Shown: piece by piece, positions 13,604 to 62,881 of the stretch
How the letters are laid out: each line of letters starts with the position of its first letter
Numbering within the stretch: the stretch's first letter is position 1
Assembly: GCF_006345805.1 (NCBI RefSeq)
Contig: NC_042998.1
Span: forward strand, 88,102,001-88,166,000
DNA from: Octopus sinensis
Taxonomy: Eukaryota
Direction of reading: 5' to 3'
Length of the DNA stretch: 64,000 nt
Notes under the pieces: model-generated
What the model saw: the letters and a program-made list of their open reading frames with translations, nothing else
Told to the model about the DNA's origin: nothing
Databases searched by the model: none
Program-made: the position numbers and the translations under genes

Positions 13604-14159
13604 TATATATATATCTTAAATCAATATTCTGTGCTATTGATTGGTGAAAGAAATTGGGTACATCTACGGCGCAACACTTATCAGGAGATTCTCACGTACG
13701 TTTTCCACACATCAAAAGCATAAGAAGAATGTGTTTACATTCTTATATTTCTCTCAAAGCTATATTTTGTAATGTATATATAATATAGGCACAGTCACAC
13801 ATGTGTGGCATCTTAAGCAAGTGTTTTCTACTATAGCTCTGGGCCAATGTAAGCTTTGCATTTGTATTTGGTGGACAGAAACTGAAGAAGCTCATTGTAC
13901 ATGTACACATATATGCGTATATATGTCTGTGTGTACGAGCGAGTATGTGCATGTTTTGTATCTCCTTTTATTGACATTGCGTAATTGTTGTAAACGTACA
14001 TTCTGTGAAAAGATGTCAGGCCATGGGGAAATATTAGTTTGCTTGGAAACAGGTAAGGGTTGGCAACAGCAAAGGCATCTGGCTACAGGAAGCCTGCCTC
14101 AATAAAATTGCCTGACCCTTGCAAGCATGAAAAAGTGGATATAAAATTGATGACAATGA

Positions 14160-14185
14160 TACATACATATACATAGATATGCGCA

Positions 14186-14282
<97 letters not shown>

Positions 14283-14285
14283 ATG

Positions 14286-14316
<31 letters not shown>

Positions 14317-15457
14317 ATGTATATATATGTGTGTGTGTGTGTGTGTATGTATATATGTGTGTGTGTGTGTGTGTGTATGTATATATATGTGTGTGTGTGT
14401 GTATGTATATATGTGTGTGTGTGGTGTGTGTATGTATATATATGTGTGTGTGTGGTATATATATATATATTGTGTGTGTGTGGTGTATGTATATATATGT
14501 GTGTGTGTGTATGTATAATATATATATATGTGTGTGTGTATATGTATATGTGTGTGTGTGTGGTGTATGTATATATATGTGTGTGTGTATATGTATATAT
14601 ATATGTGTGTGTGTTATGTATATATATATATATATGTGTGTATATATATGTGTGTATATGTATATATATATGTGTGTATATGTATATATATATACGTGTG
14701 TATATGTATATATATACGTGTGTATATGTATATATATATGTGTATATGTATATATATATATGTGTATATGTATATATGTATGTGTATATGTATATATATG
14801 TATGTATATATGTATATATATATATGTATATATGTGTATATATATATGTGTGTGTGTGTATATGTATATATATATATATATGTGTGTATATGTATATATA
14901 TATGTGTGTATATGTATATATATATGTGTGTATATGTATATATATATATATATGTGTGCATATGTATATATATGTGTGTGTATGTATAAGTATATATATA
15001 TGTATGTATATATATGTATATATATATGTATGTATATGTATATATGTATGTATATGTAAGTATATATATGTGTATGTATATGTAGTATATATATGTGTGT
15101 GTATATGTAAGTATATATATGTGTGTATGTATTATAAGTATATATATGTGTGTATGTATATATAGTATATATATATATGTGTGTATATATAAGTATATAT
15201 ATATGTGTGTATATATATAAGTATATATATATGTGTGTATATATATAAGTATATATATGTGTGTATATATATATAGTATATATATATGTGTGTATATATA
15301 TATATATTATATATGTGTGTGTATATATATATATATATATAGTGTGTATATATATAAGTATATAATATGTGTGTATATATATATGTATGTATATATGTGT
15401 GTATATATATAAGTATATATATATGTGTGTATATATATATATGTGTGTGTATATATA

Positions 15458-15489
<32 letters not shown>

Positions 15490-16325
15490 GTGTGTGTGTG
15501 TGTATATATATATATAATATATATATATATAATATATATATATATGTGTGTGTGTTGTGTGTGTGTGTGTGTATGTATATATATGTGTGTGTGTGTGTGT
15601 TGTGTGTGTATGTATATATATGTGTGTGTGTGTGTGTGGTGTGTATGTATATATATGTGTGTGTGTTGTGTGTATGTATATATATGTGTGTGTGTGTGTG
15701 TATGTATATATATGTGTGTGTGTGTGTATGTATATATGTGTGTGTGTGTGTGTGTGTATGTATATATGGTGTGTGTGTGTGTATATATATATTATATATG
15801 TGTGTGTGTGTGTATGTATATATATGTGTGTGTGTTGGTATATTATATATATATATGTGTGTGTGTATATGTATATATGTGTGTGTGGTGTGTATATGTA
15901 TATGTGTGTGTGTGTATATGTATATATATATGTGTGTGTGTGTATATGTATATATATATATATATGTGTATATATATATATATGTGTGTATATGTATATA
16001 TATATGTGTGTGTATGTATAAGTATATATATATGTATGTATATGTAAGTATATATATGTATGTATATGTAAGTATATATATGTGTGTATGTATATGTAAG
16101 TATATATATGTGTGTATGTATATGTAAGTATATATATGTGTGTATGTATATGTAAGTATATATATGTGTGTATGTATATATAAGTATATATATGTGTGTA
16201 TATATAAGTATATATATATGTGTGTATATATATAAGTATATATATATGTGTGTATATATATAAGTATATATATATGTGTGTATATATATAAGTATATATA
16301 TGTGTGTATATATATAAGTATATAT
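14160..16325. repeat. About 2.2-kb compound (TG)n/(TA)n/(TATG)n microsatellite with higher-order units
   Basis: Direct reading. Almost uninterrupted purine-pyrimidine alternation, ending about 135 nt before the 16464 acceptor. Confidence 0.95.
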
Positions 16326-17679: not shown

Positions 17680-18600
17680 TCATCATCATCATCATCATCG
17701 TTTAGCGTCCGCTTTCCATGCTAGCATGGGTTGGACGGGTCAACTGGGGTCTGTGAAGCTGGAAGGCTTCGTCAGGCCCAGTCAGATCTGGCAGTGTTTC
17801 TACGGCTGGATGCCCTTCCTAACGCCAACCACTCCGCGAGTGTAGTGGGTGTTTTTTACGTGCCACCTGCACAGGTGCCAGACAGAGCTGGCGAACGGCC
17901 ACGAACGGATGGTGCTTTTACGTGTCACCGGCACGGGGCCAGGCGATGCTGGCAACGGACACGAACGGATGGTGCTTTTACGTGCCACCGACACGGGGCC
18001 AGACAGAGCTGGCAAACGGCCACGAACGGACGGTGCTTTTACGTGTCACCGGCACGGGGGCCAGCCGAGGCTGGCAACGGACGCGAACGGATGGTGCTTT
18101 TACGTGCCACCGACACGGTTGCCAGACAGAGCTGGCAAACGGCCACGAACGGATGGTGCTTTTACGTGCCACCGACACGGGGCCAGACAGAGCTGGCAAA
18201 CGGCCACGAACGGAGGTGCTTTTACGTGTCACCGACACGGGGCCAGGCGAGGCTGGCAATGAACACGAACGGATGGTGCTTTTACGTGCCACCGACACGG
18301 GGCCAGGCAGAGCTGGCAAACGGCCACGAGCGAATGGTGCTTTTACGTATCACCGGCACGGGTGCCAGACGAGGCTGACAGCGGACACGAACGAATGGGT
18401 CACTTAACCCCTGCTTTCTGATATATGATTTGATTTTGATTGTTCTCACTGGTCTTGCCGGGTCTTCTCACGCACAGCATACTTCCATAGGTCTCGGTCT
18501 CTGGTCATTTCCTTGGTGAGACCTAGAGTTCGAAGGTCGTGCTTCACCACCTCGACCCAGCTTTTCCTGGGTCTACCTCTTCCACAGGTCCCCTGTTTTT
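17680..18600 (-). mobile_element. RTE LINE 3' end with nine-unit 60-61-bp VNTR in its 3' UTR
   Basis: ORF end GTCGRGRPRKSW.EVVKHDLRTLGLTKEMTRDRDLWKYAV at 18446-18600. GGTGCTTTTACGT units at about 17849, 17911, 17971, 18032, 18093, 18154, 18215, 18275 and 18336. (GAT)n tail at 17680. Confidence 0.88.
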
Positions 18601-33769: not shown

Positions 33770-35660
33770 ACCCTTACTTGTACCCTGAATTCTTCACTGT
33801 ATTCATTGCCAACCTTCACCTTACTGGTAGCATCCCTATACATGGCTTGTACAGGGATGTATCCCTAGTTTCCACTTTGACCACCAGTTAAGGAATCGGG
33901 GAACCCAGTCAAAGGCTTTCGCCAAGTCAACAAAGGCCAAGTACAGAAGTTTATCTTTGGCTAAGTATTTCTCCTGCAGCTGCATTATCAGAAATATAGC
34001 ATCAGTGGTGCTTCTGCCTGGCACAAAACCAAACTGCATCTCATCTAGGCTAACTCCTCCCTAATTAGTTAGGCTATGACTCTGTCCATAACTTTCATCA
34101 CCTGATCCAACAATTTGACACCTCTGTAATTATTTCTATGTAAGGCATCACCTTTACCTTTGTAGCAGTTGACTATGGTGCTACTACAGCAGTCATTGGT
34201 TATGACTCCTTCATGGTCCATGAATATGGGTGACTAGACCGTCAGATATTTTAACCCACACCCTCAGATATTTTAAGCACTTCAGCAGTTATTCCTGATG
34301 GACTGGGGGCTTTCCCTGACTTTATATCATTAATTGCTTTATCTACCAAGGAACTGTCAATTTGGATAGCTGGTCCCTCAGCTGGGTCAACATTTGGCAG
34401 ACTCGCCTCCTCCCATTCATTCTCCATTTGCAGCAGTCTTTCATAATGGCATTTCCAAGCCTCTTTCTTTGCAGAACCATTAAATGCAAGTGCACCATTA
34501 TCCATTCAGACACATTTCTCTCCTATGATATCACAGTTTTCTCTCACACATTGTCTTGCAATCTGAAACACTTCAATTCCTTGGTCCTCACGTCACTGAA
34601 CATAGGCAAACTTCTTTTCTGCTTCTTCTTTAGCTAGATATACCTGTCGCCTAACTTACCTTCGCACTATCTAATACAGTTCCCTGCTACCCCCACTCTT
34701 CCAGTCCTTCCAGGCCTGTTTCTTTGCTCTAATGGTCTTGTCTTCTGCATTGTTCCACCACCATGACATTACCTTAGGTCTGGTTAGGACTTCGCACCTC
34801 CCACAGATTTGGTCTGTGGCTCTCAGCAAGCTGTCCCATAGGAATTCCCAGTTGCTCTTTATGTCACAAGTTTGTAGCTCCTCCTTCCTCATAAAATTTC
34901 TCACTTAGGATGTCCTTAAATCTCTGAGCACATGAAGGGTTCTTAAGCTTCCAAATCCTTCTTTTTCAGATTGGTCTGCTTCTGGCCTGGAGTCTAGAAT
35001 TACTAACAACTAGTCTATGCTGGGGGATACATTCTTCACCAGGGTGGGTCTTTGTATTTAAGAGCAACCATGCATCCTGCTGCCTGGTGAGAATGTAATC
35101 GATCTGGCTAGCATAGCCACCTGATTGGTAGGTTATCAGGTGGCTGGTCGGCTTCCTGAAGTTGTTGTTGCAGATAAGCAGGTAATTTGCATTACAGAAC
35201 TCCAGTAACCTTGTTTCCTCTTTGTTTTGTGAACCAGTTCCATGGTCCCCATGTACACCATGGAAAATACTGGGCTGCTGCCCACCATGACCATTGAAGT
35301 CCCCAGCCACAAAGATGAGATCTTTGTCATTTGTCTTAGAGGTAGCCTGCAGGAGAACATCATAAAAATGGTCCTTCTGTGCATTTGGTTGGCCTGCTTG
35401 TGGGGTATAGACAGGGATAATTGATGCTATGCTATTCTGCAAGACTAGCCTGAGCTTAAGCACTTTATTACTTACTCTGGCTATCTCTATGACCTTATCC
35501 ACCCGTTTCTCTGCAAGAAGTATGCCCACACTGCCTACCCCATCACTGTTACCTTCCCAGAAGATTCTATACCTATGAGTTTTGCCTGTGAGGAATCTGG
35601 CTGAAGCCCCTCTCCACCTTATCTCTTGGATGCAGCATACATCAAAATGCCTCCTTTCGT
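33770..35660 (-). mobile_element. RTE-clade LINE, APE endonuclease plus N-terminal RT, decayed
   Basis: DVCCIQEIRW, VY.PQAG, VAGDFNGH, SQIDYIL and QHRLVV (APE motifs); QFGFVPGRSTTDAIF and LAFVDL.KAFD.VPR (RT). Many frameshifts. Lies in the last SLC25A10 intron. Confidence 0.92.
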
Positions 35661-48580: not shown

Positions 48581-51500
48581 TAACAAATCTTTAATCTTAT
48601 AAATCCAAAGATGTCTTTCCATACATCCATCCATACATCCATTTTCTCTGCTCACTATTCCTGATAGGATTGTGGGGTAGAATCCTTCGGCACTGCCTCC
48701 ACAAGGTCCAGTCAAAAGTAACCATCATTATACTTACTGGTTGGATTCTTGAGTGTGATGAGGTAAGATTACCCAGCCATCTCATTATTGTCCTAACCCT
48801 AGGTTTGCTGCCAGTTGGTTTGGCCTGAAGAATCCATCTTGCAATTCTTTCCTGTGACATTCTAATTCCATATCCTGAAATATCCTGGAGCTGTAACTTC
48901 TCAGTGTGGAGAAGAAGTAGGAACTCAATCTGGAGAGAGTCCTTGATCTCTGAGCTATACACTCTGTCAGGTAACATTACTCCAGAGATCCTTTGGAGAA
49001 ACCCTATTTTTGACTGCTTATATTCGCAGTTGTACTCTTTTAGTCATTACCCAACATTTATGACCATAGGTGATGATTGGCATGGAAACCAAATTGAATA
49101 TACCAAATATGTAATTTATTATTTTTTTAAGGTTTTGTTATTAAGGCTCAAATTGTTTTTTGTAGATTTTTTAAGCTTCCATCAGCAGATAGTTTCAAAT
49201 TAGAATGATGTTAAAATTGTGCCTGCTCTTGTGGTATTTGAACTCATAATACTGAGTGAATGGAAATAAGCTTCAAGCATATCAAGGCTATAACTTGCTT
49301 TCAAATCTCAGTTGTAGTGGTCATTTTACTTCAATGTCATTAATGTTTACTTTAGATTATCCTGATAGGAAGTGTGGAAGGGAAGAGAACAAGAAGCCAT
49401 CAAAGATGTTTTGGAACTGATGACATCAACAAATGGACTGGAAGCAAGAGCCTGGCTGACTGCATGCAGGCAACACAACACAGAAGGAAAAGGAGAGTCT
49501 TCGAAAGCCAACACCTAAATAAAATGTGGGTATCTTGTTGGCTGGCATAAATGTCTCTGTGAAATGTATTCTTGTTATGACACCTCATTTCTTCATTATA
49601 ATATAACGTCTTATGCTTATATAAAAATGAGTATTGGTCATTTGTGGAGTATAGTACAATAGTATAGAGGTAAGCTCTTTTTGAAATGAACACATAACCT
49701 GGTTTTGATTTGTTGTTCAAGCCATTCCACTTCATGTACATTCCTAAAAATGACATGAATATCGTATCACACAATATTATTCATTACTTGTGGGAAATCT
49801 AAAACATCATTCCTATGCAACAAAATATATCTTTATTAAAAGGTAGTTTTGAGTCTTTGTAGAATAATGTCCCAAACACCCTTTTCAGTATTGCTGTTTA
49901 TTGTCCTTGTCATAAAATGAAACCCAGTACCACCTTTGTTCTTAATTTTTCCAGAATTGGTGAAATGAATATCAAATAGCAGTAATCTACTTGGGTAAAT
50001 TCAGCTTGGGTATATGTCCATCCCAAGAAATCTGTTGTGAAGACTGTGGTGGTAGTGTTGGCAGTGGCAGCAGTGGTTGTTGCTCTTGTTGAATATTCTC
50101 AGAAAGCTAAGTACATGACCAACTCACAATTTCCATTTGGAAATACTTTCCATTATATTGTTAAATGTCTTTAGACTAAAGTTCAAGACATCTTAATTTC
50201 TACTCTTAAAACTTAAGTCTTCATATCTACATGCAACAACTGACATATTGGAAATTATAATAGAATTTGATATTTGATTGGCATATAGAAAAATATATAT
50301 TTAATATCAGTCTATGTTAATGGTGGTGTTGTCAACAGCAGCATTGTTGGGTTGGCAGCATCATCATCATCATTATCATCAGCATCATTGTGGGGAGAGA
50401 CTAGCTATGCTCAACTTTTTCTCTGTCTTCCTTATCAGCAGAAAGAGAATTAAAAATTTCAGTTCTGATCATGAGCCCAGAGTCGTATCACCATCAAAAC
50501 ACTAAAACCAAATATTTCCAAGCAAGTTTAATATTGCATATTATTATAACTTACTGCTGTAAGAAAGAGTGTTACAAGTGACAAAAGTTTCATTTGTTTG
50601 CAGTTCTGAGTTTAATATTTTTTTTTTTTTCATAAATATTATAGTGATGTTGCTAGAGGCACAGGGCTTAGTGGTTTGAGTGTTGGACTCATGGTCATAA
50701 GATTGTGATTTCAATTCCTGCACTGGGCAATGCAGTGTGTTCTTGATCAAAACATTTCAGTTCATGTTATTCCAGTTCACTCAGCTGGTAAAAGCAAGGC
50801 ACCCTGTGATGGACAGGCATTCCATCCAGGGAGTAATATATACGCCACAGAAACCAGGAAACCAGCCCTATGCTCTTTACGGGGTAATGTGGACCAGCCC
50901 CCATTATAGTGGTTAAAATAAACTCCAAGGAAAATGAGTTCTTATTCAATGGCGTCTCACAAAAGCAATAAACAATGGGAAAACATTTCTGACAGTAATA
51001 TATGGATGATGGATTAAATACATTAATAACTAAATTAACTGTCACTAGAAACAATGAATTGCTATTTTCTCTATTTATTGTTGAATCTATTTTAAAAGAA
51101 GTTTTTGATTGTACAAAAGTATTGTAAGTCTTCTTTTTATTTCTTTTTTTAATTATAACATCTTTCAAGCTAAAGGGTATTTTGTTTAAATAGTGACTTT
51201 ATAATTGTTTGTTGGTTATGATGATGCTTTGCTTATTATTGAGTATTCTCAGAGTTTAGTTGAAGTAAATTTATAGAACAAACATATGTAAACTACTTTC
51301 TTTCATCCCACTAATCTTGGGACACTAAAATGGATCAGTGTATGCTGTTTTTCATCCTCTGATTAAATGATGAAAGAAAAATGGAAAAATGATAAAATAT
51401 ACACTATCAATTTTCTGGATATTCCAGTGGAAGAACTTTTTATTGCTTTCTGCTGGTATGAATGGAAACAGTTCTGGGAAAAACGAGTGTGTGATGTATT

Positions 51501-53087
51501 TTACATATATGTATATATATGTACACACAAACGCGTGCACATACTCACGCACATAACCGTGCTTGGAAACAAGTTTGTAACAGGAAGAAATTTTGGGCAA
51601 CAAGCTTCATACAAGCATGCAAATGTGGACGTTATAACAAGGTAATACATACAAACATATACGAACGTGCGCATGTATGTAAACATGGAAGAGTGAACTT
51701 CAAACGATGATGATGATGATGATGATGATGATATTAAGCCACCTTTAGCAACATGCACCATACTTTCGGTAATTGTTTTAGGTACTTCTCTAGTCGCAAG
51801 CAGACATAGACTTTATTTCGTTTCCCCTCACCCTTTGCCTAGTTGCACATCCAAGATATGGTAGATGGTAGAAAAGAGAGTTGTGCCAGCACCTGGCTGG
51901 TACTCATTTACAGCTGACTGAATCAAGCAATGCGAAATGAAGTGGTTTCACAGAAGTAGAATGTAGTATCCAGTCCATGAATTGAACCTACAAATTTTCC
52001 GGCGTGAACACACTACCATTAGATCACGCACCACTACAGATTGAGCCACTAGTAGAATAAATGCATTAGTGATGTTATTGAATTGTAATTGCTTTCGCTT
52101 GGCCTTCAAAACGTTTCGAACTATCGGTTTGTCAGTTTATAAACTTAAGGTAGAATGATACAGTTATGTAAAAATGAGATTATTTCAGAGTGTTGGAAGC
52201 TACTTCGTACTTAAACATACTTCTACAAAAACTGTGTTAGTGACACTCCTAAGTTGATGAGCAATTTAATCTGTAGTCAATTACAGTACTCATTAATGAC
52301 ATTTTAAAAAATTGCTGTATATATTTTAATGTCAATAAGATAAAGGTTGAATGCTTAACCATTCGCCCGCAGAGAAGGAAAATATGTTAAGTGTTGTTCT
52401 TCCGATTGAACGGAATTTAAAATGTTCTTTTTATTTAAATTAAACAAATATATAAATAACTAAAAACTATTCATTTGACACTTCGTTCTTGCAAAGTTAG
52501 TAAGTAACTAAGAGGAAATAACTCACACCGCTGCAAGGGAAATAACTCATGCATAGCCGTAAACACGCTCGTATGCCTTTGATGAAACCATAATTGAATA
52601 TCTTAAAATTAGTTATTCTTTCCTTAATCGATCCACCATTTAGTTAATATACCCTAAGTAAAGGTATCCTCTTTCACATGTTTAAAGGAAAGTAAAATAT
52701 CTTATCCGCTTATGTTGCTTTTTATATATGTGCGTAAACTTGTGACCATTAGACCCCTGTGTTAAATTTCTATAGAAATTACTTTAAAACCGCTAGGTTT
52801 TATTTAATGAAATTATTCTAGACCTAAGTATATCTCCATTCCGCTTTTGCTCTCTGATAACACGATGTCAGAATCAAATCCTAATCTGATCAAGTTATTT
52901 TTGAAAATGTGTTTACTGTATATTATTTAAATATTACATTTCTAAGAAAAATCACTACCTTTTTAAAGATTCAACGTCTTCTTGACAGCCGCACAATGTC
53001 ATCAAATACTCAGGTTTAGACCAACAGGTCTAAACTTGACTTATTTCTAAGTCAAGTGATTCTCTTATCAGAATTAGACCCCTCCAC

Positions 53088-53237
53088 CACTAGCGTAGCT
53101 AGAGTGTGTCCTGTCTGGGGCAGCCCTTCCGTTTGCCGCTCGCGGACCCCACAAAAAAAACAAATATTACCTACAGCAATAGCCTACAACAGGATGAAAA
53201 GTGCCGCTCGGGGCGGACCACCCCAGCTACGCTAGTG
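53088..53237. mobile_element. MITE with CACTAGCGTAGCT TIRs (family shared with 62719-62881)
   Basis: CACTAGCGTAGCT ... AGCTACGCTAGTG. Internal CCCTTCCGTTTG...GGACCCCACAAAAAA...GGGGCGGACC is shared with the second copy. Confidence 0.8.
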
Positions 53238-56200
53238 CCCCCACTCGTCTACATTCAATTACACTCATGAATTAAATCATATCTCTTCTGTGGGGACTTT
53301 TAATGTATATATAGAAAGGTCGGTTTTGCTGGAACACATTTCACCAAAACGCCTATGTTCGTAATACGCTTATATACATAAATTTATAACATCATTGCTG
53401 AGACTTCAAAAGATTCTAGAAAAATATAAGTTTTTGTGACCCACGTCTAAATGTTCAGCTTGCCTCACAGTCAGGCACGCTGGAGCATGCTTTGTACACC
53501 ATATAAGAACACACTGGTAAGAATTATGTTGGAATCATTTCAATTTTCAATTCCAGTAATATATTCTATCCGATGATTTTAACTAGACATGATTGTCACA
53601 ATAGTCTGTCTCCCATAATTGAATATTTTTTTCTTTTTCAAATAGCCAAATGCAGTAAATTATATGTAGCAATAAATGTCAAAAGTTAAAGGTTCGTGGG
53701 TTTGCTTAATTTATTATATATACACAGCCAGTTAAACCACACGATAATATTCATCAATACAACAAACAGGTGACTAGGCAATCGCGCCGACATTGGTGAC
53801 AAAGCAACCTCATGACAAGTGTTATTAGTCCACAACATGTCATTGTAGCTCCTCTGCCTTTTAGATCGATGGATCAAGGAAGAAACACAAGTTTTTGCTG
53901 ACGACCGTTCGTTCTCCCACAGCTGGATTGAGCAGGCAGACTGAATTCGGTGTCCGCACACATTCATGTTTATTTATTTCAACAATATTTGAACACTGTC
54001 AATTTGGAGCACACAAAATCTTTGCTTGGAGCACTCATGTTTCAAAATTTTGTATGCTACTTCTTCATCTTCGTTCTCGTCATCAACCAGTATAAAAACA
54101 TAACAGTACACCTCTTAATCCTCTGCAAAATGCTCAAGAATATAATTCTCCACCCCTGAATCTGTAAAGTCACCACATGCTTATTCTCAATTTTCTAAAC
54201 CAAATTTGGCTAGCAGTATTTGCCTGTACTTTTATTATCCACATAACTTCGGGGTATCTTCAAGTGACGCCGATTCACAGATTTAAATGCCAAACTCTTA
54301 ACATTCTTTTAAGTTCAAGTGCTACTACGTGTACCAGTGTATTTTTAATAGAGGGGTTAGTTGGAACATGTTTCAACGAACAAGCAAATTATTTCCTGCT
54401 TCATTCCAATTACATTTTAGTAAACAATCGACACACGAAATTCTTCATTTTTGACAACTGTGTTTACTAAACAAACTAAACATTTCTAACAAGTGAAAAT
54501 TATACTTTAAGATGGGGGAACATATAGGAACCTTTCTGTTCGCTTGCAAAGCTTCTGTATCGGCTTTCACCTTATTACATTTATCTCCAAGTTCTTTGAT
54601 ATTGTTTTAAAAAAAAACAAAAAAAAAACAGTGGAAAAAGCAGGTATCTCATGTTACGACGCGTTCCAACTAACCTCACATTTCCCAATACATGTAAATA
54701 CAACATCCATACAAACACATATGTAATGCATATCACACACACACACACATGTGGTGTGTGTTTGTGAGTGTATGCGTCGTTTATTGAAACTTATGTTTTA
54801 TCCCACGATTCGAGTTTCATGTCACGGCGATTTTCACTTTTTTTTCCTACTCTAGGCACAAGGCCTGAAATTTTGAGGGAGGTGGGCCAGTCGATTAGAT
54901 AGACCTCAGTACGCAACTGTTACTTAATTTATTGGCTCCGAAAAGAAGAAAGGCAAAGTGAACCTCAGCGGAATTTGAACTCCGAGCGAAAAAGACAGGA
55001 GAAATATCACTAAGCATTTCGCCCGGCGTGCTAACGTTTTTGCTATCTGGCTGCCTTGAAAATATACAATATTACGTTAATAGTTTTCGTTAAGCAGAGA
55101 AAAGAAAGTCGTATAAAGTACTTCACTCATCATTTTATCAACCTCGACAACAATGAAAGACAAATCTTGCATTCTGATTATTGAGAGCAAATAAGATGCC
55201 GTCGCTCACAAATTAACGTGATCAACACTGCGTTGTACCCGCTATCCAGCTCTAAATTCTGCTTCCTCTAACAATATTTTCAACAAATTACTCCAACCAT
55301 CACCATCTTTTATGCAAGCTGAAAAATACCGTTGACAAGTTATAATCAACTTCTGTGCAAGAAATCTATAATATTTGTCATGCATGCCACCTAGTAACCT
55401 GTTGTAGGCAAAAATTTTTAATGTTTCACGTCATTTCACGTGATAGTACGATCCTCTTACCTTTCCCGCCTCAACCCAACTCTGTCTTCTATCCTCCTAT
55501 GTTCTGAAATTGATCTCTCCTGCTGTTATCATTACTGAAAGTTTGTGCTTTTAGTTGGGTCAACAAATTTTATTTAAGCCTGTCAGAATTTGTGCGGCAC
55601 CCCCAGCGCACTGATTTTAGCACATTAGGCGATCACCGACCTTGCACATAGCCAAACGTTAGCAATATAGTTGATGAATGGTAGCTTACCAGGTTATTGG
55701 TGTATCAAGAGGAAAACCAACTCTTCATCTCTCATCAACTACCAAAAAGCATTTTAACATGCATAGACTCATATAATATTGGTTTCAAATTTTGGCAGAA
55801 GGCTAACAATTTCTGGGGAGTGGGTAAGTCAATACTCCAGTGTCCAACTGGTACATATTTTATCGACCCCGAAAGGATAAAAAGCAAAGTCGACCTTGAC
55901 GGAATTTGAACTCAGGACGTAAGGACAGACGACATGTTGCTGAGCATTTTGCCTGGCACAGTAACGATTCTGCCAGCTTGCCGACCGAGACTCATACATA
56001 TTAAGCTGAAATTAAGTGTAACAGAAAAAGGCACATGGCAGAGTCGTTAAAGCGTCGGACAGAATACCTGCGCTGTTTAGTTAAGATTTTTACATCTGGT
56101 GTTTAAATTCCTCCGCGTTCAGCTTTGCTTTTGATTCTTCCGGAGCATTCAAGAACTGGTGTCGATTTGGAAGATCGTTTTATCAGACGGCAGGAGCACT

Positions 56201-57681
56201 ACAGAATTAACGAGAGATACATCAGCTTCCAGTAATATATTTAGAGCTGTTCCCACGTTGAACCCATTAATAGAGGCGACATAAAAAACAGAACAAAGAA
56301 ACATTACATCAAAATTTTTCCCAGAAATAATATGCATCACTGACTGATAGCACGCCACATGCATTTACATAAATGCGTAGGTGTGTATGTGTGTATATGT
56401 GTGCATATCTGTGTGTATGTCTGTCCTGTCCAATAGATAGTGAGCAACAATCTGTTGACTTATGTTAATGGTCCTTTGAATGCACCGTTGCTATCTAAAA
56501 ACGCGTGGGTAGTTTCAAGTAACAGTTTGTTGCTTACGTTACTACTATAGCTCTGTTAAGATTAAAATGTTTTGTTCGAATGAAAATATCCTAAACGTCA
56601 CACAGGTCGTAGCAGATCAAGCGAGTGCTGCAAAATATTGATTTGTTTTGACGAAGTACAGAGCAAATGTCTACAGTGACTGGATATGATCAATAGAATC
56701 GATCTAAAAAATAGTTTTCTATTATTTTATCGATGCAAGGATGGAAAATAAGTCAAATCTGACGGGATTATAATTCAGAGTTACAAAAGATTGGCTCACA
56801 TTCGTCTAGGTTTATTGACTGAACTAACGAGATATGAACATCTCTGACATTACCGAGATCATTGACTGTATAAATGAAGTGAAATAGTTTCGACCAGGAA
56901 TTGAAACCGTGTAATGACCTTTGTTGTGTGTGAACTCCTGAAGTTATCCCTTAATTCTTTAGTGATGTATGGTGACAGCAAAAATATGATAAGAAACTTC
57001 TACTTGCCTGGGATATACGTATGAGGTAAAAGTCAGTCTTAAATAAATTGTATTTTGGAATTGCTTCAGTCACCAATGGGAGAGCGTTTACAAAATATAT
57101 ACTAGATACTAAAGAAGTAGCCTCTCTAATCTGAAGTTGGAATCCATACAATTTGGAATCGATTACCAACTACATTAATAACCCATGAAAACATGCAGCA
57201 ACAACAAGATTGCTTTTGATGGGTTTCAAATTTGATACAAAGTCAAAAATTAGTAACATTAGAAATAGTCGTTGTGCTTTCAGTGGCAAAGATGAATATG
57301 CATGAGCAGATGTTTCTGGATCCTTCAGTAGTAACAATTAAAGCAGTAAGCGCTTTGGTGAAGTGTAATTATTTCATGAGTAAGGAAGGGAGTCAAATTC
57401 TTTTTGATTAAGAGTAGCTCCGATGTCAGCTTCAGAGACGTCTTTTCAATTGCAAGTGGCGTTTGGTTGTCTTGGATGAATCACGAATGTAGTTTTTACT
57501 GTATGAGCCAACCATGACATTCTGAAATTTGAAGTCAAAACGTAGCTTTTGAAGAAAGATTATATCTCTTCATGAACAGACTTATGGGCGACTGTTTGCA
57601 AAAGGCGAGCTGTTGAAGGAAGGCTTTTTGTTTTTAGCAATCAAGACATTGTCATAGATAGTTTACACACTCACGAGTTTC

Positions 57682-58180
57682 GGATCTTTTCGGTTTGAAC
57701 GGCAGTTTTTAACATAATTTCTAGGTAACTAAAAAATGTTAAACTTCGTATACTGGTAGAATGTGTTTATAAAACATCTATTTCTCTTGGCTTTATTGAG
57801 AAAATTCTATAGTTTGTAAGATATTTGTTGTTGTTTTTCTTCAATTTCTGCAATTTCAACCAATCACTGACGTCTGCTGAGGTAAAAAAAACATTCTGTG
57901 CCGTACGAATTTCTGCAATTTCAACCAATCACTGACGTCTACTGAGGTAAAAAAAACATTCTGTGCCGTACGAATATTCCCTCGTTTAAGAAACAGATTG
58001 GGTTTATTTACATTTATGAAGAAAAAAAAAGATACCCTTCCCCCACCCCTAACCCTAACCCTAAGTAACTCTAACCCTAAAACAGATTGAAATGCAATAG
58101 ATCGATACTAGGGTCATAATTATGGGTGGCAATTTCATATGACACCGCAGGAAAAACTGCCGTTCAAACTGAAAAGATCC
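57682..58180. mobile_element. 499-bp MITE with about 29-bp TIRs, candidate 8-bp TSD, internal 65-bp duplication and CCCTAA repeats
   Basis: GGATCTTTTCGGTTTGAACGGCAGTTTTT ... AAAAACTGCCGTTCAAACTGAAAAGATCC. Flanks CGAGTTTC / CGAGTTTG. Tandem units start at 57843 and 57908. Confidence 0.88.
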
Positions 58181-59013
58181 CGAGTTTGAAATGAAAGTTA
58201 CCAAAGCCTTCTAATGTAGCTTTATTCCACAAGCAGCCACCGTTGAACTTCAAGAAGTGTCGGTAACGCATCGAGATTTTCAGGTCGTAGTCCACGTTTC
58301 AGACGAAGGATTTCAAGGTATATTGTTTTATCAGCAATATTCATCGTGTACCATTGGAAGACCGTACTTTAAATGGCACATCTGAATAGTTGCTGATTAT
58401 ATGTATAATGTATTCCACATAAATATGGCATAGTCAACATTTTCGGTCGCAGCTTATGGGTTTAAGTGTTTCACTGCTTTTTTATTTGATATATATATTG
58501 TAGCTAACCTCTATCCCAGATAGCAAAAACATAACCTTCAAAATATCGCGTAATTTAACATTCACAACGAGGAGTTACATTTCCTGTTGATATTTTGCAT
58601 ACTTTTCAGGTTTATAGAAAGCACACAATCACAAATTTGTGTGTGTGTGTGTGTGTGCGAGAGAGAGAGAGAGAGAGAAAGATAGTGAGTGAGCGTGCGC
58701 ATATATGTATGTGCATAGCAGTTTCTGCAGCAACGTGATGCGCAAGGACTCAGTTGCATCTTATAGTATGAGTGCGTTGCATTTTATAGTAGAAACAGCC
58801 GTAAGCTAATGAAGTTCATTACATAGATTCTTGTTTCTTGGTCATTTATCTAATTTCTTATAACGCTCTGTACTCGACTGAAACTTTTTTTCTGAAGTAC
58901 AATGGGTTCTGGCACCAGGTTATTACTATTGCTATCCGTAAGCAAAATATTAGTATACACACACGCACACACACATACATACATACATAGATAATATATA
59001 CATACATATATAT

Positions 59014-59069
<56 letters not shown>

Positions 59070-59162
59070 TTTGCAGCTTTATTAATAAATCATATTACTC
59101 TACCTTCGGTATTCGAGTATGTGTATATATATATATATATATATATGCATGTATGTATGTAT

Positions 59163-59199
<37 letters not shown>

Positions 59200-59497
59200 C
59201 ATGCATACATACATACATATTTATATTATACTTGTATATACTTTGAAGCACGACATGTTACCAAAATTGGTGCTCAAAAATAGGCCTTACATTCTTATCC
59301 TATATCCAGTATGGTACGACGGGGTGCATCACCATCAACCAGCGTAATGCTTGTAAAACACTGAAGATATACTTTAACAAGATTACAACGTTTTAAGAAG
59401 GAATTATGCAATCTCAGTAGTAATTCGGGGAAACGAGTGTATGTTATGTAAAGCATAAAATACCATACACGTTTTGTGTATTATATATATATATATA

Positions 59498-59662
59498 GGC
59501 GCGGGAGTGGCTGTGTGGTAAGTAGCTTGTTTACCAACCACATGGTTCCGGGTTCAGTCCCATTGCGTGGCACCTTGGGCAAGTGTCTTCTACTATAGCC
59601 TCGGGCCGACCAAAGCCTTGTGAGTAGATTTGGTAGACGGAAACTGAAAGAAGCCCGTCGTA

Positions 59663-59704
<42 letters not shown>

Positions 59705-59932
59705 TGTGAGTGTTTGTGTGTCTGTGTTTGTCCCCCTAGCATTGCTTGACAACCGATGCTGGCGTGTTTATGTTCCCGTTACTTAGCGGTTCGGCAAAAG
59801 AGACCGATAGAATAAGTACTGGGCTTACAAAAGAATAAGTCCCGGGGTCGAGTTGCTCGATTAAAGGCGGTGTTCCAGCATGGCCGCAGTCAAATGACTG
59901 AAACAAGTAAAAGAGTAAAAGAGAGTAAAGAG
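59498..59932 (+). mobile_element. CORE-type tRNA SINE, full length
   Basis: GGCGCGGGAGTGGCTGTGTGGTAAG (A-box-like), GGGTTCAGTCCC (B-box-like), CACCTTGGGCAAGTG (MIR/CORE-like), internal (TA)(TG) tract, (GTAAAAGA)n tail. Confidence 0.9.
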
Positions 59933-59999
59933 ATATATCCAGTCAGTGTGAAAGACGTATGCATGTGTGTATTTTTGTATGTATGTATGTATGAGCGTA

Positions 60000-60413
60000 T
60001 CTCTTTTACTCTTTTACTCTTTTACTTGTTTCAGTCATTTGACTGCGGCCATGCTGGAGCACCACCTTTAATCGATCAACTCGACCCCGGGACTTATTCT
60101 TTGTAAGCCCAGTACTTATTCTGTCTGTCTCTTTTGCCGAACCGCTAAGTGACGGGGACATAAACACACCAGCATCGGTTGTCAAGCAATGCTAGGGGGA
60201 CAAACACAGACACACAAACACACCCGCACACACATATATATATATACATATACACGACGGGCTTCTTTCAGTTTCCATCTACCAAATCCACTCACAAGGC
60301 TTTGGTCGGCCCGAGGCTATAGTAGAAGACACTTGCCCAAGGTGCCACACAGTGGGACTGAACCCGGAACCATGTGGTTGGTTAGCAAGCTACTTACCAC
60401 ACAGCCACTCCTG
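60000..60413 (-). mobile_element. CORE-type tRNA SINE, inverted relative to the 59498 copy
   Basis: Reverse-complement match to 59498-59932 along its length, tail-to-tail with a spacer of about 70 nt. Confidence 0.9.
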
Positions 60414-60714
60414 TTTTAGTTTAAGTTCTTTTTGAATCGGTCGCTAAAATAGCGACAAGACGTTTTTAATCGAGAGTCCCCAGTGTTTGTAAATATGTGT
60501 TTGAGTCGGAACGTTGGTTGAACTGTCAGTGCATACACTGCAGTAATGTGTGCATCTATTCACATAAGAATCTCATACGGAGAATTTTTGGAACGTCTTC
60601 CAAATCTTCACTGTGCGACTTATAGATTTGATTTGGAGAATCCGCGTCAGTTTCTTTTGCTCTTTATCCGTGAAACCGAGTATTTCTAGGTTTTTGTGAA
60701 AATTTGTTATGAGA

Positions 60715-60715
<1 letters not shown>
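60414..60715 (-). mobile_element. Short 3' fragment of an R4/Dong-like RLE retrotransposon
   Basis: NLEILGFTDKEQKKLTRILQIKSISRTVKIWKTFQKF* parallels the C-terminus of the 61423-62650 element (NLDKLGFLERDIDLLIRTLQVQSVSETISVCKTFLKF). The 3' boundary is uncertain. Confidence 0.6.
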
Positions 60716-60747
<32 letters not shown>

Positions 60748-60876
60748 TGTATGTATGTATGTATGTATGTACGAATGTATGCATGTATGTAAATACATAT
60801 GTATGTGTGTGTATGTAATATAGGTATGAATGTAAGCATATGTGCATGTATGTATGGATTCTGTATTATGCATATA

Positions 60877-61320
60877 TATATTAATTTAGTAACATCAATT
60901 TAACACCAGTGGTTTAGCGCATAAAATACTGAGATTCAGTAAATATTATTAATACACATATGAGAGAGAATCCACTAAACTGGACGCCCTTACGCTAAAG
61001 AGAGATCCGCATGAGTCTCAACCACTAAAAATTGTTCTCAAGAAAAACTTAGTGCACCATGAACGTAAGCGAGCAGGACAAATGAAAAATAACAAAAATA
61101 ACAATTATTTTTCATTTGTCCTGCTCGCTTACGTTCATGGTGTGCTAAGTTTTTCTTGAGAACAATTTTTAGTGGTTGAGACTCATGCGGATCTCTCTTT
61201 AGCGTAAGGGCGTCCAGTTTAGTGGATTCTCTCTCATATGTGTATTAATAACATTTACTGAATCTCAGTATTTTATGCGCTAAACCACTGGTGTTAAATT
61301 GATGTTACTAAATTAATATA
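60877..61320. repeat. 444-bp near-perfect palindrome (216-bp arms, 12-nt loop)
   Basis: Arms 60877-61092 and 61105-61320 pair in register with three mismatches found by eye. Loop CAAAAATAACAA. Confidence 0.95.
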
Positions 61321-61422
61321 CAATTTTTTCACCCTCATTTTGACTATATATATATATATATGCTTATACGTTTGTATGTATGTATGTCTGTATGTATGCA
61401 TGTATATATGCATGCATGCATG

Positions 61423-62650
61423 TCTCTTCCATGTTTTTAATTATTATAAATCTTCGACTGAGGAGGGACCCAGTTTCAAACAAGGAGACAAGGCTCCATC
61501 TTTGGGATGTACTTAACATAGACAAATTCACATTTGGAACTTGAGAAAAGTCTTGCATACACTTATTGTTTCACTCACGGATTGCACTTGTAAAGTACGA
61601 ATTAGCAGGTCGATATCTCTTTCTAAAAATCCCAGTTTATCCAGATTCTCCTTTAAACATTTACTGACAAAACCTAGTGCTCCAATTATTGGTATGAATA
61701 TAAATTCATAATCTGGATATAAAAGCTAGAGGTTTCGAAGCAGTTGTCTATAGATATCCCTCTTTTCCTTTGATTTTCAATGAGATATTTATATCTGCGG
61801 GGCAGCTGACCTCTATGGCATTACATACCTTTGCTCCTCAGTCCCAAACGACAATATCTGGCCTGTTATGTTTAAATTTGACAGAAGTTTTGATGGGAAT
61901 ATTCCACCAGTATTCTTTGAGCTGGTGTTTATAAATATATTCCATAACAGAGATATTTTCTAAATTCATTTCAGTACAGTCTTTGTTGCGGATGTCATTG
62001 TAAATTGTTTTAGTGACAACATCGTGCAGCATAGGGAGATTGTACTGCGAAGACATTTAAGCACAGCATGCGTGATGTTTTCCACAGAAACATGACATAA
62101 AATACACATGCGGTTACACCTTGGGATTACAAGAGCGTTATTGTCTCTCTTGTTCACCAGGTACTTTGTGGCAATCTCCTGTTCCTGGATTGCAAACACA
62201 TAACCTTCAAAGTGTGATGTGATGTAATGGTCTTGTGTCCAATTGTATATCAATTCTGTTTTCATCAAGCTTCCGGGCATAGTCTTCTATGAGGTAAGAG
62301 AACCCAGCTGTTTTGGGGCTGTATAGGAAATCATCAGGAAAAGAGTGCTTTTTAAGGAACTCACTGCCAACTCGTACAATGTTGCTCACTTCACCTTTCA
62401 GCACTGCATTTATATATTTATTTTTGCTGCTGTTGCTCAGCAGGTGCTGCCTGAGTAATACCATACGGCATTCGAAGGCCGTCTGCACTGATCTCAGGCC
62501 TCTACCTCCTTCATTTCTTCTTAGACGCAGCCTGGCAATATCACTGTTTCTGTGAAAGTTCCCAGTTGTTGTTAGGATTTTGTTAGTTTTGATATCTATG
62601 GAGTGGATTTCCTATACAGACTAATCAAGTATCCCAAATGTTGGGATCAG
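61423..62650 (-). mobile_element. R4/Dong-clade non-LTR retrotransposon (restriction-like endonuclease type), 5'-truncated, decayed
   Basis: Frameshifted translation FGILD*..EIHSIDIKT...FHRNSDIARLRLRRNEGGRGL; EGYVFAIQEQEIATKY; CILC..SVENITH....C zinc knuckle; LHDVV; HNRPDIVVWD; IEVSCPAD; IIGALG. These are the recognised RLE-clade C-terminal motifs. Confidence 0.85.
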
Positions 62651-62718
62651 CATGTATGTATGTATGTATGTATGTATGTATGTATGTATGTATGTATGTA
62701 TGTATGCATGTATGTATG

Positions 62719-62881
62719 CACTAGAGTAGCTAGAGTATGTGCCGCTCGAGACGGCCCTTCCGTTTGCAGTCCCCGGACCCCACAAAAAACACATATTGCC
62801 TAGAAGAGACCCGAAAGCGTCGCCCCTTTAAAAGTGTCACCTGGGGCGGACCGCCCCTACCGCCCCATAGCTACTCTAGTG
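62719..62881. mobile_element. MITE with CACTAGAGTAGCTA TIRs inserted in (TATG)n
   Basis: CACTAGAGTAGCTA ... TAGCTACTCTAGTG. Flanks TATGTATG / TATGTAGG. Confidence 0.82.

What the first reader, a model, noticed from the sequence alone, without database searches (positions are those of the whole stretch)
60877..61320. 444-bp near-perfect palindrome between two RLE fragments
Seen: 216-bp arms of complex non-microsatellite sequence, three mismatches, a 12-nt loop, TA-rich ends and no ORF. It resembles nothing else in the window. Established: such palindromes extrude cruciforms and are usually short-lived. Inference: a very young all-TIR foldback transposon, a fold-back repair product, or a hairpin-RNA (endo-siRNA) locus. 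This is the most striking unexplained structure in the window.
Basis: partly seen in the sequence, partly recalled or inferred. Interest (0 to 1): 0.7.

Follow-up and report, generated by a model that had tools for sequence, protein, structure and literature searches.

The report
Young 444-bp palindrome in octopod DNA
A real, near-perfect 444-base DNA palindrome lies in a simple-repeat tract between two broken retrotransposon copies of an octopus-like genome; it is most likely a recent one-off copying accident with no function of its own, but a young mobile element cannot be excluded.

Summary
The arms are 60877-61092 and 61105-61320 (216 nt each) with a 12-nt loop and three mismatches, all transitions. 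Two of them are the TG/CA pair expected from independent decay of one mirrored CpG. The predicted hairpin is about 46 sd stronger than shuffles. These differences argue against a read chimera and suggest an age of roughly 0.6-2 My.

The window is octopod. The palindrome sits inside a (TATG)n/(TA)n tract that serves as 3' tail and target for restriction-like-endonuclease (RLE) LINEs. Two truncated copies of such LINEs flank it on the minus strand, and distant relatives elsewhere end in (CATA)n or (CTTA)n.

The arm has no second copy in the window, no internal sub-repeats, no unambiguous target-site duplication, no Rfam family and no coding signal. No tool here holds an octopus genome, so copy number could not be measured, and a positive control showed the protein database is blind to octopus repeats.

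Best reading (about 0.45): one fold-back synthesis event at a break in this tract. Main rival (about 0.3): a newborn all-TIR MITE. An endo-siRNA locus is disfavoured, because molluscs show no dedicated siRNA pathway. If the locus is transcribed, ADAR hyper-editing is the more likely fate. Interest is modest.

The parts
60877..61092 (.). Left arm of the palindrome (216 nt)
   Evidence: 213/216 complementary to the right arm
61093..61104 (.). 12-nt loop CAAAAATAACAA. Its AAAAATAA (61094-61101) is complementary to the first 8 nt of the right arm, which gives an alternative 8-bp stem with a 3-nt loop
   Evidence: read directly from the sequence
61085..61104 (.). 9-nt tandem duplication AAAAATAAC x2.2, spanning the inner end of the left arm and the loop. 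Without it the loop would be 3 nt
   Evidence: Tandem Repeats Finder
61105..61320 (.). Right arm of the palindrome (216 nt)
61321..61344 (.). 24-nt unique orphan segment CAATTTTTTCACCCTCATTTTGAC between the right arm and the (TA)n tract. It has no counterpart on the left side
   Evidence: matches only itself in the window
60715..60876 (-). (CATA)n/(TA)n microsatellite as read on the minus strand, abutting the left arm. It lies upstream of LINE fragment B
   Evidence: TRF 60718-60881, period 4, TATG
61345..61420 (-). (TA)9 plus (CATA/CATG)n as read on the minus strand: the 3' tail of LINE fragment A
   Evidence: The relative in L002 ends in a long (CATA)n and the one in L001 in (CTTA)n
61421..62600 (-). 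RLE-type LINE fragment A, 5'-truncated at the (CATA)n tract 62640-62720. It carries a CCHC knuckle, HNRPDIVVWD...EVSCPAD...K (a PD-(D/E)xK-like motif), the C-terminus ...CKTFLKFQM* and about 110 nt of 3'UTR. It has frameshifts and stops
   Evidence: (12 relatives at 31-48% identity; one carries RVT_1 and one zf-RVT)
60412..60714 (-). RLE-type LINE fragment B, severely 5'-truncated: the last ~46 codons (...SISRTVKIWKTFQKFSV*) plus 3'UTR, paralogous to fragment A
   Evidence: 75 bits against the family C-terminus HMM

Best explanation
The palindrome is a genuine, single-locus inverted duplication made in one event by fold-back (snap-back) synthesis at a break in the (TATG)n/(TA)n tract that RLE LINEs use as tail and target. 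A 3' end beside the present centre folded back on a short inverted microhomology (AAAAATAA / TTATTTTT). It copied about 216 nt of its own strand back out to the edge of the (TA)n run, and the product was then joined to the other broken end. The polymerase was either a repair DNA polymerase or, less likely, the LINE reverse transcriptase copying its own cDNA at the 5' end of a short insertion. The ancestor was a perfect palindrome. Since then it has collected three transitions, and perhaps the 9-nt loop duplication that widens the centre. It has no function of its own. As DNA it can form a hairpin or cruciform and is a potential fragile site. If the locus is transcribed, it gives a 216-bp dsRNA that ADAR would hyper-edit. 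Shown: the structure, its limits, its mismatches, its LINE/microsatellite setting and the central microhomology. Inferred: that it is one-off, and the break and fold-back mechanism.
For: (1) Only 3 differences in 216 nt, all transitions and two at one mirrored CpG, so the ancestor was a perfect full-length palindrome born recently. With the octopus rate used in PMC13282606 (JC 0.09 = 25 My) this gives about 1.9 My, or 0.65 My without the CpG site. Birth at this locus needs one event; a transposon needs birth plus a move. (2) There is no second copy or partial copy of the arm in 64 kb. (3) No non-palindromic direct repeat flanks the structure. Only TA, TATA or TTAA, all hidden inside the palindrome, could be a target duplication. 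(4) The structure is asymmetric outside the arms: 24 unique nt lie on the right only, as expected for junction or ancestral sequence and not for a TIR element. (5) The loop carries an 8-nt complement of the arm's inner end, which is the kind of microhomology that primes fold-back synthesis. In yeast, DSB fold-back inversions arise this way, with the copy captured by end joining (PMC11724301). (6) The site is break-prone. It is a hairpin-forming (TA)n/(TATG)n tract cut by microsatellite-targeting RLE LINEs: fragments A and B flank it in the same orientation, and relatives end in (CATA)n or (CTTA)n (PMC4640811).
Against: Copy number in the genome could not be measured. The searches that came back empty cannot see octopus repeats: a positive control with an ORF from the abundant SINE found a single protein, from Argonauta hians. 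Fold-back inversions documented at yeast breaks are 2 to about 150 bp and mostly under 14 bp (PMC11724301), so 216 bp is long for that route. The ends (TA...TA next to a (TA)n run) are also what a TA-targeting transposon would leave. No single-arm allele or orthologous site was seen. If the reverse transcriptase did the copying, the arm should be the 3' end of a LINE or SINE, but it shows no similarity to fragments A or B or to the family C-terminus.
Confidence: 0.45

Rival explanations
1. It is a copy of a very young all-TIR (palindromic) MITE or foldback-type DNA transposon that inserted into the (TA)n run, with a TA, TATA or TTAA target duplication hidden in the palindrome's ends.
For: The outermost bases are TATA...TATA, next to TTAA, beside a (TA)n tract, which fits Tc1/mariner-type (TA) or TTAA-type targets. 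Both flanks carry the same microsatellite on the same strand, as expected for an insertion into one tract. Octopus vulgaris has about 3,200 TIR insertions within 2% of their consensus (PMC13282606), and palindromic MITEs are known elsewhere, for example the frog Harbinger repeat (PMC5625713). One copy in 64 kb is expected even for a family of thousands.
Against: There is no second copy in the window and no similarity of the termini to anything there, including the transposase-like ORF at 7854-8465. No unambiguous TSD exists. The termini lack the usual CAGT or CCC starts. The arm has no internal direct repeats (top score 8, equal to the shuffled mean of 8.1), so it has neither IR/DR binding-site pairs nor FB-type sub-repeats. 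A family that had transposed repeatedly would rarely keep 216-nt arms that trace back to a perfect palindrome. The 24-nt orphan segment is left unexplained.
Confidence: 0.3
2. It is an assembly or library artefact: a fold-back chimeric read, or a strand-switch error, incorporated into the consensus.
For: Perfect-looking palindromes are a known product of chimeric library molecules. I could not inspect reads, and the structure lies between microsatellites that are hard to assemble.
Against: The two arms differ at three sites. All three are transitions, two form the reciprocal TG/CA pair of one CpG, and the many A/T homopolymer runs show no indel difference. That is the signature of mutation in vivo, not of two strands of one molecule or of sequencing error. 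The flanks on the two sides are different and collinear, with both LINE fragments on the minus strand and the same microsatellite strand, so the arm-to-right-flank junction would need its own chimeric support. The loop is not adapter-like.
Confidence: 0.06
3. It is a functional hairpin-RNA gene: an endo-siRNA precursor or a giant miRNA-like hairpin.
For: As RNA it forms a 216-bp stem from either strand (-375.7 kcal/mol). Generic miRNA covariance models score its tip, at 41-50 bits.
Against: All Rfam hits are far below the gathering scores (50 against 96, 46 against 80, and so on) and occur on both strands, as any perfect hairpin would give. Molluscs, including O. bimaculoides, show no evidence of a dedicated endo-siRNA pathway (PMC12479628). 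The arm has no detectable homologue that could be a target (although the database is weak here). The setting is junk DNA between dead LINE fragments. At 1.4% arm divergence there is no conservation to point to.
Confidence: 0.04

Closest known systems
Fold-back (inverted-duplication) insertions formed at DNA double-strand breaks by microhomology-primed synthesis (yeast Break-Ins data, PMC11724301) and related replication template-switch inversions
   Same: Two inverted copies are separated by a short loop. A short inverted microhomology lies at the centre. One outer junction carries little or no homology. The setting is break-prone.
   Different: Documented events are 2 to about 150 bp and mostly under 14 bp; this one is 216 bp. 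The break, the polymerase and the ancestral single-arm state are inferred here, not observed.
Palindromic (all-TIR) MITEs, e.g. the ~200-bp palindromic Harbinger repeat of Xenopus tropicalis (PMC5625713) and human MADE1 (PMC1784062)
   Same: It is a short non-coding element that is a hairpin over its whole length, with TA-rich ends in a TA-rich target. If transcribed it would be an ADAR substrate.
   Different: Those are families with many copies and a defined TSD. Here there is one copy, no demonstrable TSD and no partner transposase. The arms are also far longer and more perfect than in those families.
Human palindromic AT-rich repeats (PATRR11, PATRR22, PATRR17); from my own knowledge, not tested here
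   Same: They are single-locus, non-coding, near-perfect palindromes of a few hundred bp with almost no spacer, able to extrude cruciforms and expected to be unstable.
   Different: To my recollection, PATRRs are much more AT-rich than this sequence, which is 66% A+T. No rearrangement or polymorphism data exist for this locus.
Drosophila hpRNA loci (endo-siRNA hairpins; PMC10317233)
   Same: A long inverted repeat capable of forming several hundred bp of dsRNA.
   Different: hpRNAs derive from, and target, identifiable genes, and they need a siRNA Dicer/Ago2 pathway. No target was found here, and the pathway is not evident in molluscs (PMC12479628).
Microsatellite-targeting RLE LINEs of the R4/Dong type (context, not the palindrome itself; PMC4640811, PMC13282606)
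   Same: The flanking fragments have a CCHC knuckle plus a PD...E...K nuclease motif C-terminal to an RT. They have 4-nt microsatellite tails and form same-orientation arrays within the microsatellite.
   Different: Clade assignment was not tested by phylogeny, and Pfam and PDB sequence searches gave no direct hit.

Membership tests
MITE / TIR DNA transposon | Terminal inverted repeats | tested here: met
   Met trivially: the whole element is two 216-nt inverted arms.
MITE / TIR DNA transposon | Target-site duplication of a fixed length flanking the TIRs | tested here: inconclusive
   No direct repeat lies outside the palindrome. Only self-complementary candidates (TA, TATA, TTAA) inside its ends are possible.
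MITE / TIR DNA transposon | Multiple dispersed copies, and empty sites | not testable with these tools
   One copy in 64 kb. No octopod genome is available. The database negatives are uninformative, as the SINE control shows.
MITE / TIR DNA transposon | Termini shared with an autonomous element | tested here: not met
   No similarity of the arm ends to anything else in the window. Genome-wide this could not be tested.
Drosophila-type Foldback (FB) elements | Arms built of tandem sub-repeats | tested here: not met
   The best internal direct repeat is 8 nt, equal to the shuffled mean. TRF finds only the 9-nt duplication at the centre.
Tc1-like IR/DR-derived MITE | Two direct-repeat binding sites within each long IR; termini TA-CAGT... 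| tested here: not met
   No significant DR pair within the arm. The termini read TA-TATTAATTT.
Helitron | 5'-TC and 3'-CTRR ends, insertion between A and T, a short subterminal 3' hairpin | tested here: not met
   Neither strand gives A|TC...CTRR|T at the limits, with or without the 24-nt segment, and the hairpin is about 10 times too long.
Fold-back inverted duplication at a break | Inverted copies adjacent, with a short spacer | tested here: met
   12-nt spacer, or 3 nt without the 9-nt duplication.
Fold-back inverted duplication at a break | Short inverted microhomology at the turning point | tested here: inconclusive
   AAAAATAA in the loop is complementary to TTATTTTT at the start of the right arm. 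It is present, but an A/T-rich 8-mer is weak evidence.
Fold-back inverted duplication at a break | An ancestral or allelic state with a single arm continuous with one flank | not testable with these tools
   This needs another haplotype or a sister species.
hpRNA / endo-siRNA locus | Arms homologous to a target gene; 21-22-nt siRNA production; a siRNA pathway in the taxon | tested here: not met
   No homologue of the arm was found (weak). Small RNAs are not testable here. The pathway is not evident in molluscs (PMC12479628).
miRNA precursor | A match to a family at its gathering score; a ~60-90-nt hairpin | tested here: not met
   The best hit is 50 bits against a gathering score of 96, on both strands. 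The stem is 216 bp.
RLE (R2/R4/Dong-type) LINE, for the flanking fragments | RT-linked C-terminal CCHC plus a PD-(D/E)xK nuclease, and a microsatellite tail or target | tested here: met
   Relatives carry RVT_1 or zf-RVT. The motifs CRLC..H..C, (K/R)PD, E.SCP.D..K are visible. Tails are (CATA)n or (CTTA)n. The clade was not tested by phylogeny.

The most novel reading that the evidence does not exclude
The hairpin is a by-product of retrotransposition. A microsatellite-targeting RLE LINE reverse transcriptase copied about 216 nt of an RNA from the (CATA)n tail inwards, then snapped back and copied its own cDNA. It added about 24 extra nucleotides at the 5' junction and left a perfect long hairpin in the same orientation as its neighbours A and B. 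If this were recurrent, abundant Dong/R4-type LINEs would be a source of the long near-perfect dsRNA structures that octopus ADAR hyper-edits, and of newborn foldback elements.
Probability: 0.12. Interest if true: 0.6.

Novelty: new member of a known kind. Interest (0 to 1): 0.33.

Why it matters
Taken alone, this is a neutral structural oddity in repeat-rich DNA. It could matter in three ways if followed up. First, as a dated, almost unmutated long palindrome it is a natural test of how long such structures survive in an animal germ line and how their centres are modified. Second, it sits in the cleavage target of an abundant, recently active LINE type, so a genome-wide count of similar hairpins next to (CATA)n tails would show whether LINE activity seeds palindromes. 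Third, octopus is the animal with the strongest RNA hyper-editing signal, and knowing where its long perfect dsRNA comes from is a small open question.

Tried and rejected
1. I looked for other copies of the arm. blastn in the window found none. A protein search with the 68-aa open frame found none. Exact 22-26-mers in metagenome, prokaryotic-genome and viral contigs found none. A positive control with an ORF from the abundant SINE found only one protein, from Argonauta hians. These negatives therefore say nothing about copy number in octopus.

2. I looked for independent assemblies of the locus through exact matches to two flanking ORFs. Neither is on record.

3. I tested whether the arm is the 3' end of an RLE LINE, because by eye ...SWCAKFFLRTIFSG* resembles the family C-terminus ...CKTFLKFxx*. 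I rejected this. An HMM of ten family C-termini, run against all six frames of the window, scores fragments A and B at 75 bits, and the arm is not among the top 25 hits.

4. I tested whether high CpG content marks a recent arrival. The arm has CpG o/e 0.93 against 0.39 for the window. However, about 10% of GC-matched windows reach this value, and much of the neighbourhood from about 51 to 61 kb is equally CpG-rich, so the result is inconclusive.

5. Rfam gave only sub-threshold generic miRNA hits on both strands, and ARAGORN found no tRNA-like sequence.

6. Pfam and PDB sequence searches with LINE fragment A gave no hits. The family was identified through distant homologues instead.

7. I looked for hairpins next to the tails of related LINEs in L001 and L002 and found none. 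Two loci are too few to weigh.

8. I tested whether the SINE pair next door is a second fold-back event. Its arm limits coincide with the SINE ends, and the left copy carries 6 nt more of the SINE head than the right. Two insertions of one young subfamily therefore fit better, but this is not proven.

Full report
**1. The observation**

The repeat finder gives arms 60877-61092 and 61105-61320, 216 nt each, 99% complementary, with 12 nt between them. It is the longest and best inverted repeat in the 64-kb window.

A base-by-base comparison shows three mismatches and the loop CAAAAATAACAA. Complementarity stops abruptly at both outer ends, where 8 of the next 29 positions match.

As single-stranded DNA the region folds into one uninterrupted hairpin of -255.5 kcal/mol, against -39 ± 5 for shuffles (z = -46). 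As RNA it gives -375.7 kcal/mol (z = -46).

No ORF of 50 aa or more lies inside. The longest stop-free stretch is 68 aa and runs across the loop.

**2. The three differences**

All three differences are transitions.

- At 61053-61054 the left arm reads TG where the reverse-complemented right arm reads CA. This is the pattern left when a mirrored CpG loses its C once in each arm. One mutation per arm at a hypermutable site is more economical than two adjacent changes in one arm.
- The third difference is A/G at 60945/61252.
- The arms contain many A and T runs but show no length difference.

This pattern fits mutation in a living genome. It does not fit the two strands of one chimeric molecule or read error, so an artefact is unlikely.

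The arms differ by JC 0.014. Using the octopus clock of PMC13282606 (JC 0.09 = 25 My), the arms separated about 1.9 My ago, or 0.65 My if the CpG site is left out. Gene conversion between the arms would make this an underestimate.

**3. What genome this is**

The window has about 36% G+C, is full of microsatellites, and has a CpG o/e of 0.39.

A 400-nt SINE occurs at least ten times in the window. An ORF read from that SINE has a single database relative, a hypothetical protein of the octopod Argonauta hians, at 75% identity.

The window is therefore octopod. The species was not determined.

**4. The setting**

Read on the minus strand, from high to low coordinates, the locus is:

| Coordinates | Feature |
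|---|---|
| 62720-62640 | (CATA)n |
| 62600-61421 | LINE fragment A |
| 61420-61345 | Fragment A's tail, (CATG/CATA)n(TA)9 |
| 61344-61321 | 24 unique nucleotides |
| 61320-60877 | The palindrome |
| 60876-60715 | (TA)n(CATA)n |
| 60714-60412 | LINE fragment B |
| 60411-59500 | An inverted SINE pair |

These assignments rest.

Fragment A encodes, with frameshifts, a CCHC knuckle, HNRPDIVVWD...EVSCPAD...K and the C-terminus ...SVCKTFLKFQM*. Fragment B is a paralogous stump...SISRTVKIWKTFQKFSV*.

Pfam and PDB sequence searches gave nothing directly. The large protein collection holds 12 relatives at 31-48% identity; one carries RVT_1 and one carries zf-RVT.

I fetched two loci of these relatives. 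One element ends in a long (CATA)n and the other in (CTTA)n.

The flanks are thus truncated copies of a restriction-like-endonuclease LINE family with 4-nt microsatellite tails. This is the behaviour described for RLE LINEs that target microsatellites (PMC4640811), and it matches the Dong-R4 type. In O. vulgaris, Dong-R4 is the LINE type with the most recently active insertions, 1,129, and covers 92.7 Mb (PMC13282606). I did not test clade membership by phylogeny.

The microsatellites on both sides are the tails and targets of these elements, and they lie on the same strand on both sides.

**5. What the arm is not**

- It has no other full or partial copy in the window.
- It contains no sub-repeats. 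The best internal direct repeat is 8 nt, equal to the mean for shuffled arms.
- It contains no tRNA-like part.
- It matches no Rfam family. The hits are miRNA models at about half their gathering scores, on both strands, as any perfect hairpin would give.
- It is not the coding 3' end of the LINE family. A resemblance I saw by eye (CAKFFLR...*) failed a profile test in which fragments A and B scored 75 bits and the arm did not appear in the top 25.
- Its CpG content (o/e 0.93) is high for the window but not for its neighbourhood, so it does not mark the arm as foreign or young.

**6. The ends and the centre**

*Ends.* The outermost bases are TATATTAA...TTAATATA.

- No direct repeat lies outside the palindrome.
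- Any target duplication would have to be self-complementary (TA, TATA or TTAA) and is hidden within the symmetry.
- On the left the arm abuts (TA)n directly. On the right, 24 unique nucleotides (CAATTTTTTCACCCTCATTTTGAC) separate it from (TA)9.
- What interrupts the (TA)n tract is therefore not purely palindromic.

*Centre.* TRF finds AAAAATAAC repeated 2.2 times at 61085-61104.

- Without one unit of this repeat the loop would be 3 nt.
- The AAAAATAA in the loop is complementary to the first 8 nt of the right arm.
- That is a short inverted microhomology of the kind on which a 3' end can fold back and prime synthesis.
- Alternatively, it is a later slippage that widened the centre of an unstable perfect palindrome. 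This second reading is my inference.

**7. Why copy number remains unknown**

None of the collections available here holds an octopus genome.

All searches were empty: two flanking ORFs, the open frame of the arm, and exact 22-26-mers in metagenome, prokaryote and viral contigs.

The control with the SINE ORF found a single protein, although the SINE is one of the most abundant repeats in these genomes. The empty results therefore carry no weight, and I do not count them for or against a repeat family.

**8. Best explanation (confidence about 0.45)**

A single fold-back synthesis event at a break in this tract.

For it:
- The arms trace back to a perfect 216-nt palindrome less than about 2 My old, so the inverted duplication is recent. 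Placing its birth at this locus requires no further event.
- There is no demonstrable target duplication, no partner element and no second copy.
- The 24-nt asymmetry and the central microhomology fit a junction made by repair.
- The site is both a hairpin-prone microsatellite and the cleavage target of an abundant LINE type.
- The mechanism is documented in yeast. One break end folds back on a microhomology, Pol delta extends it, and the new strand is captured by end joining at the other end with 0-5 bp of homology (PMC11724301).

Against it:
- Those documented events span 2 to about 150 bp and are mostly under 14 bp.
- The single-arm ancestor has not been seen.

A variant has the LINE reverse transcriptase do the snap-back at the 5' end of a 216-nt insertion. 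That would explain the (CATA)n tail on the minus strand, the shared orientation with A and B, and the 24 extra 5' nucleotides. There is no homology evidence for it. I give this variant about 0.12, within the total above.

**9. Rivals**

*A newborn all-TIR MITE (about 0.3).*
- It fits the TA-rich ends in a (TA)n target and the many young TIR insertions in octopus (PMC13282606).
- It needs an extra step, leaves the 24 nt unexplained, and lacks every testable family feature except the inverted repeat itself.

*An artefact (about 0.06).* It is hard to square with the mutation pattern and the collinear, different flanks.

*A functional hairpin-RNA gene (about 0.04).*
- It is disfavoured by the lack of an endo-siRNA pathway in molluscs (PMC12479628), the sub-threshold Rfam scores, and the junk-DNA setting.
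- If the locus is transcribed, the likely fate of the 216-bp duplex is ADAR hyper-editing, which is exceptionally strong in octopus and tied to long near-perfect dsRNA (PMC5625713).
- That paper reports that 0.44% of random 50-mers in O. bimaculoides have an inverted match above 95% within 2 kb. Its BLAST ran without a low-complexity filter, so self-complementary (TA)n tracts probably contribute (my inference). I do not use the figure as a base rate.

**10. Verdict**

The structure is real, young and striking to look at, but it belongs to known kinds: an inverted duplication or a palindromic MITE. It has no sign of function, and its origin cannot be settled without the genome it came from.

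The decisive test is a one-line BLAST of the arm against octopod assemblies, plus the orthologous site in another haplotype or species.

Interest is 0.33. The most interesting reading still open is LINE-driven snap-back as a source of long hairpins in octopus.

Noticed in passing
window 59500-60411: Two copies of an octopod SINE lie tail-to-tail with an 85-nt spacer that holds a short (TATG)n, forming a 908-bp imperfect inverted repeat with arm segments 92-97% complementary. They are about 91% alike, while the other SINE copies in the window are 70-86% alike. The arm limits coincide with the SINE ends, so two insertions of one young subfamily are the likelier reading, but an older inverted duplication is not excluded. 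If transcribed, it would also form dsRNA.
   Followed up: partly
window 60412-62720 (minus strand); L002 2900-3800; L001 10700-11000: There is a same-orientation array of truncated RLE-type LINE copies, each bounded by (CATA)n. Relatives at 31-48% protein identity in two ENA contigs of unknown invertebrates end in a long (CATA)n and in (CTTA)n. The family therefore carries 4-nt microsatellite tails and probably targets such tracts.
   Followed up: partly
window about 51000-61000 against the rest: CpG observed/expected is 0.39 for the whole window (median 0.25 in 216-nt windows) but close to 1 in much of 51-61 kb, including LINE fragment B (1.36) and the left SINE (0.98). This may reflect a mosaic of germ-line methylated and unmethylated domains.
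   Followed up: no
window 14000-16100: A block of about 2 kb of GT-rich compound microsatellite (TG/TA/TGTA types), with G+C 25% and GC skew +0.86, is read as long Cys/Val/Tyr/Ile 'ORFs' in several frames.
   Followed up: no
window 17700-18400: A tandem repeat richer in G+C (about 44%) is open in three frames on the plus strand, with recurring peptide-like units such as ...TDGAFTCHRHGARQSWQTATNG... It looks like a minisatellite rather than a gene.
   Followed up: no
window 34966-35529 (-) and 7854-8465 (+): A 187-aa ORF matches the Pfam family Exo_endo_phos_2, the AP-endonuclease of a different, APE-type LINE. A 203-aa ORF looks transposase-like by eye (...WQHDSTPCHTS...) but has no Pfam match at E of 0.01 or better.
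   Followed up: partly
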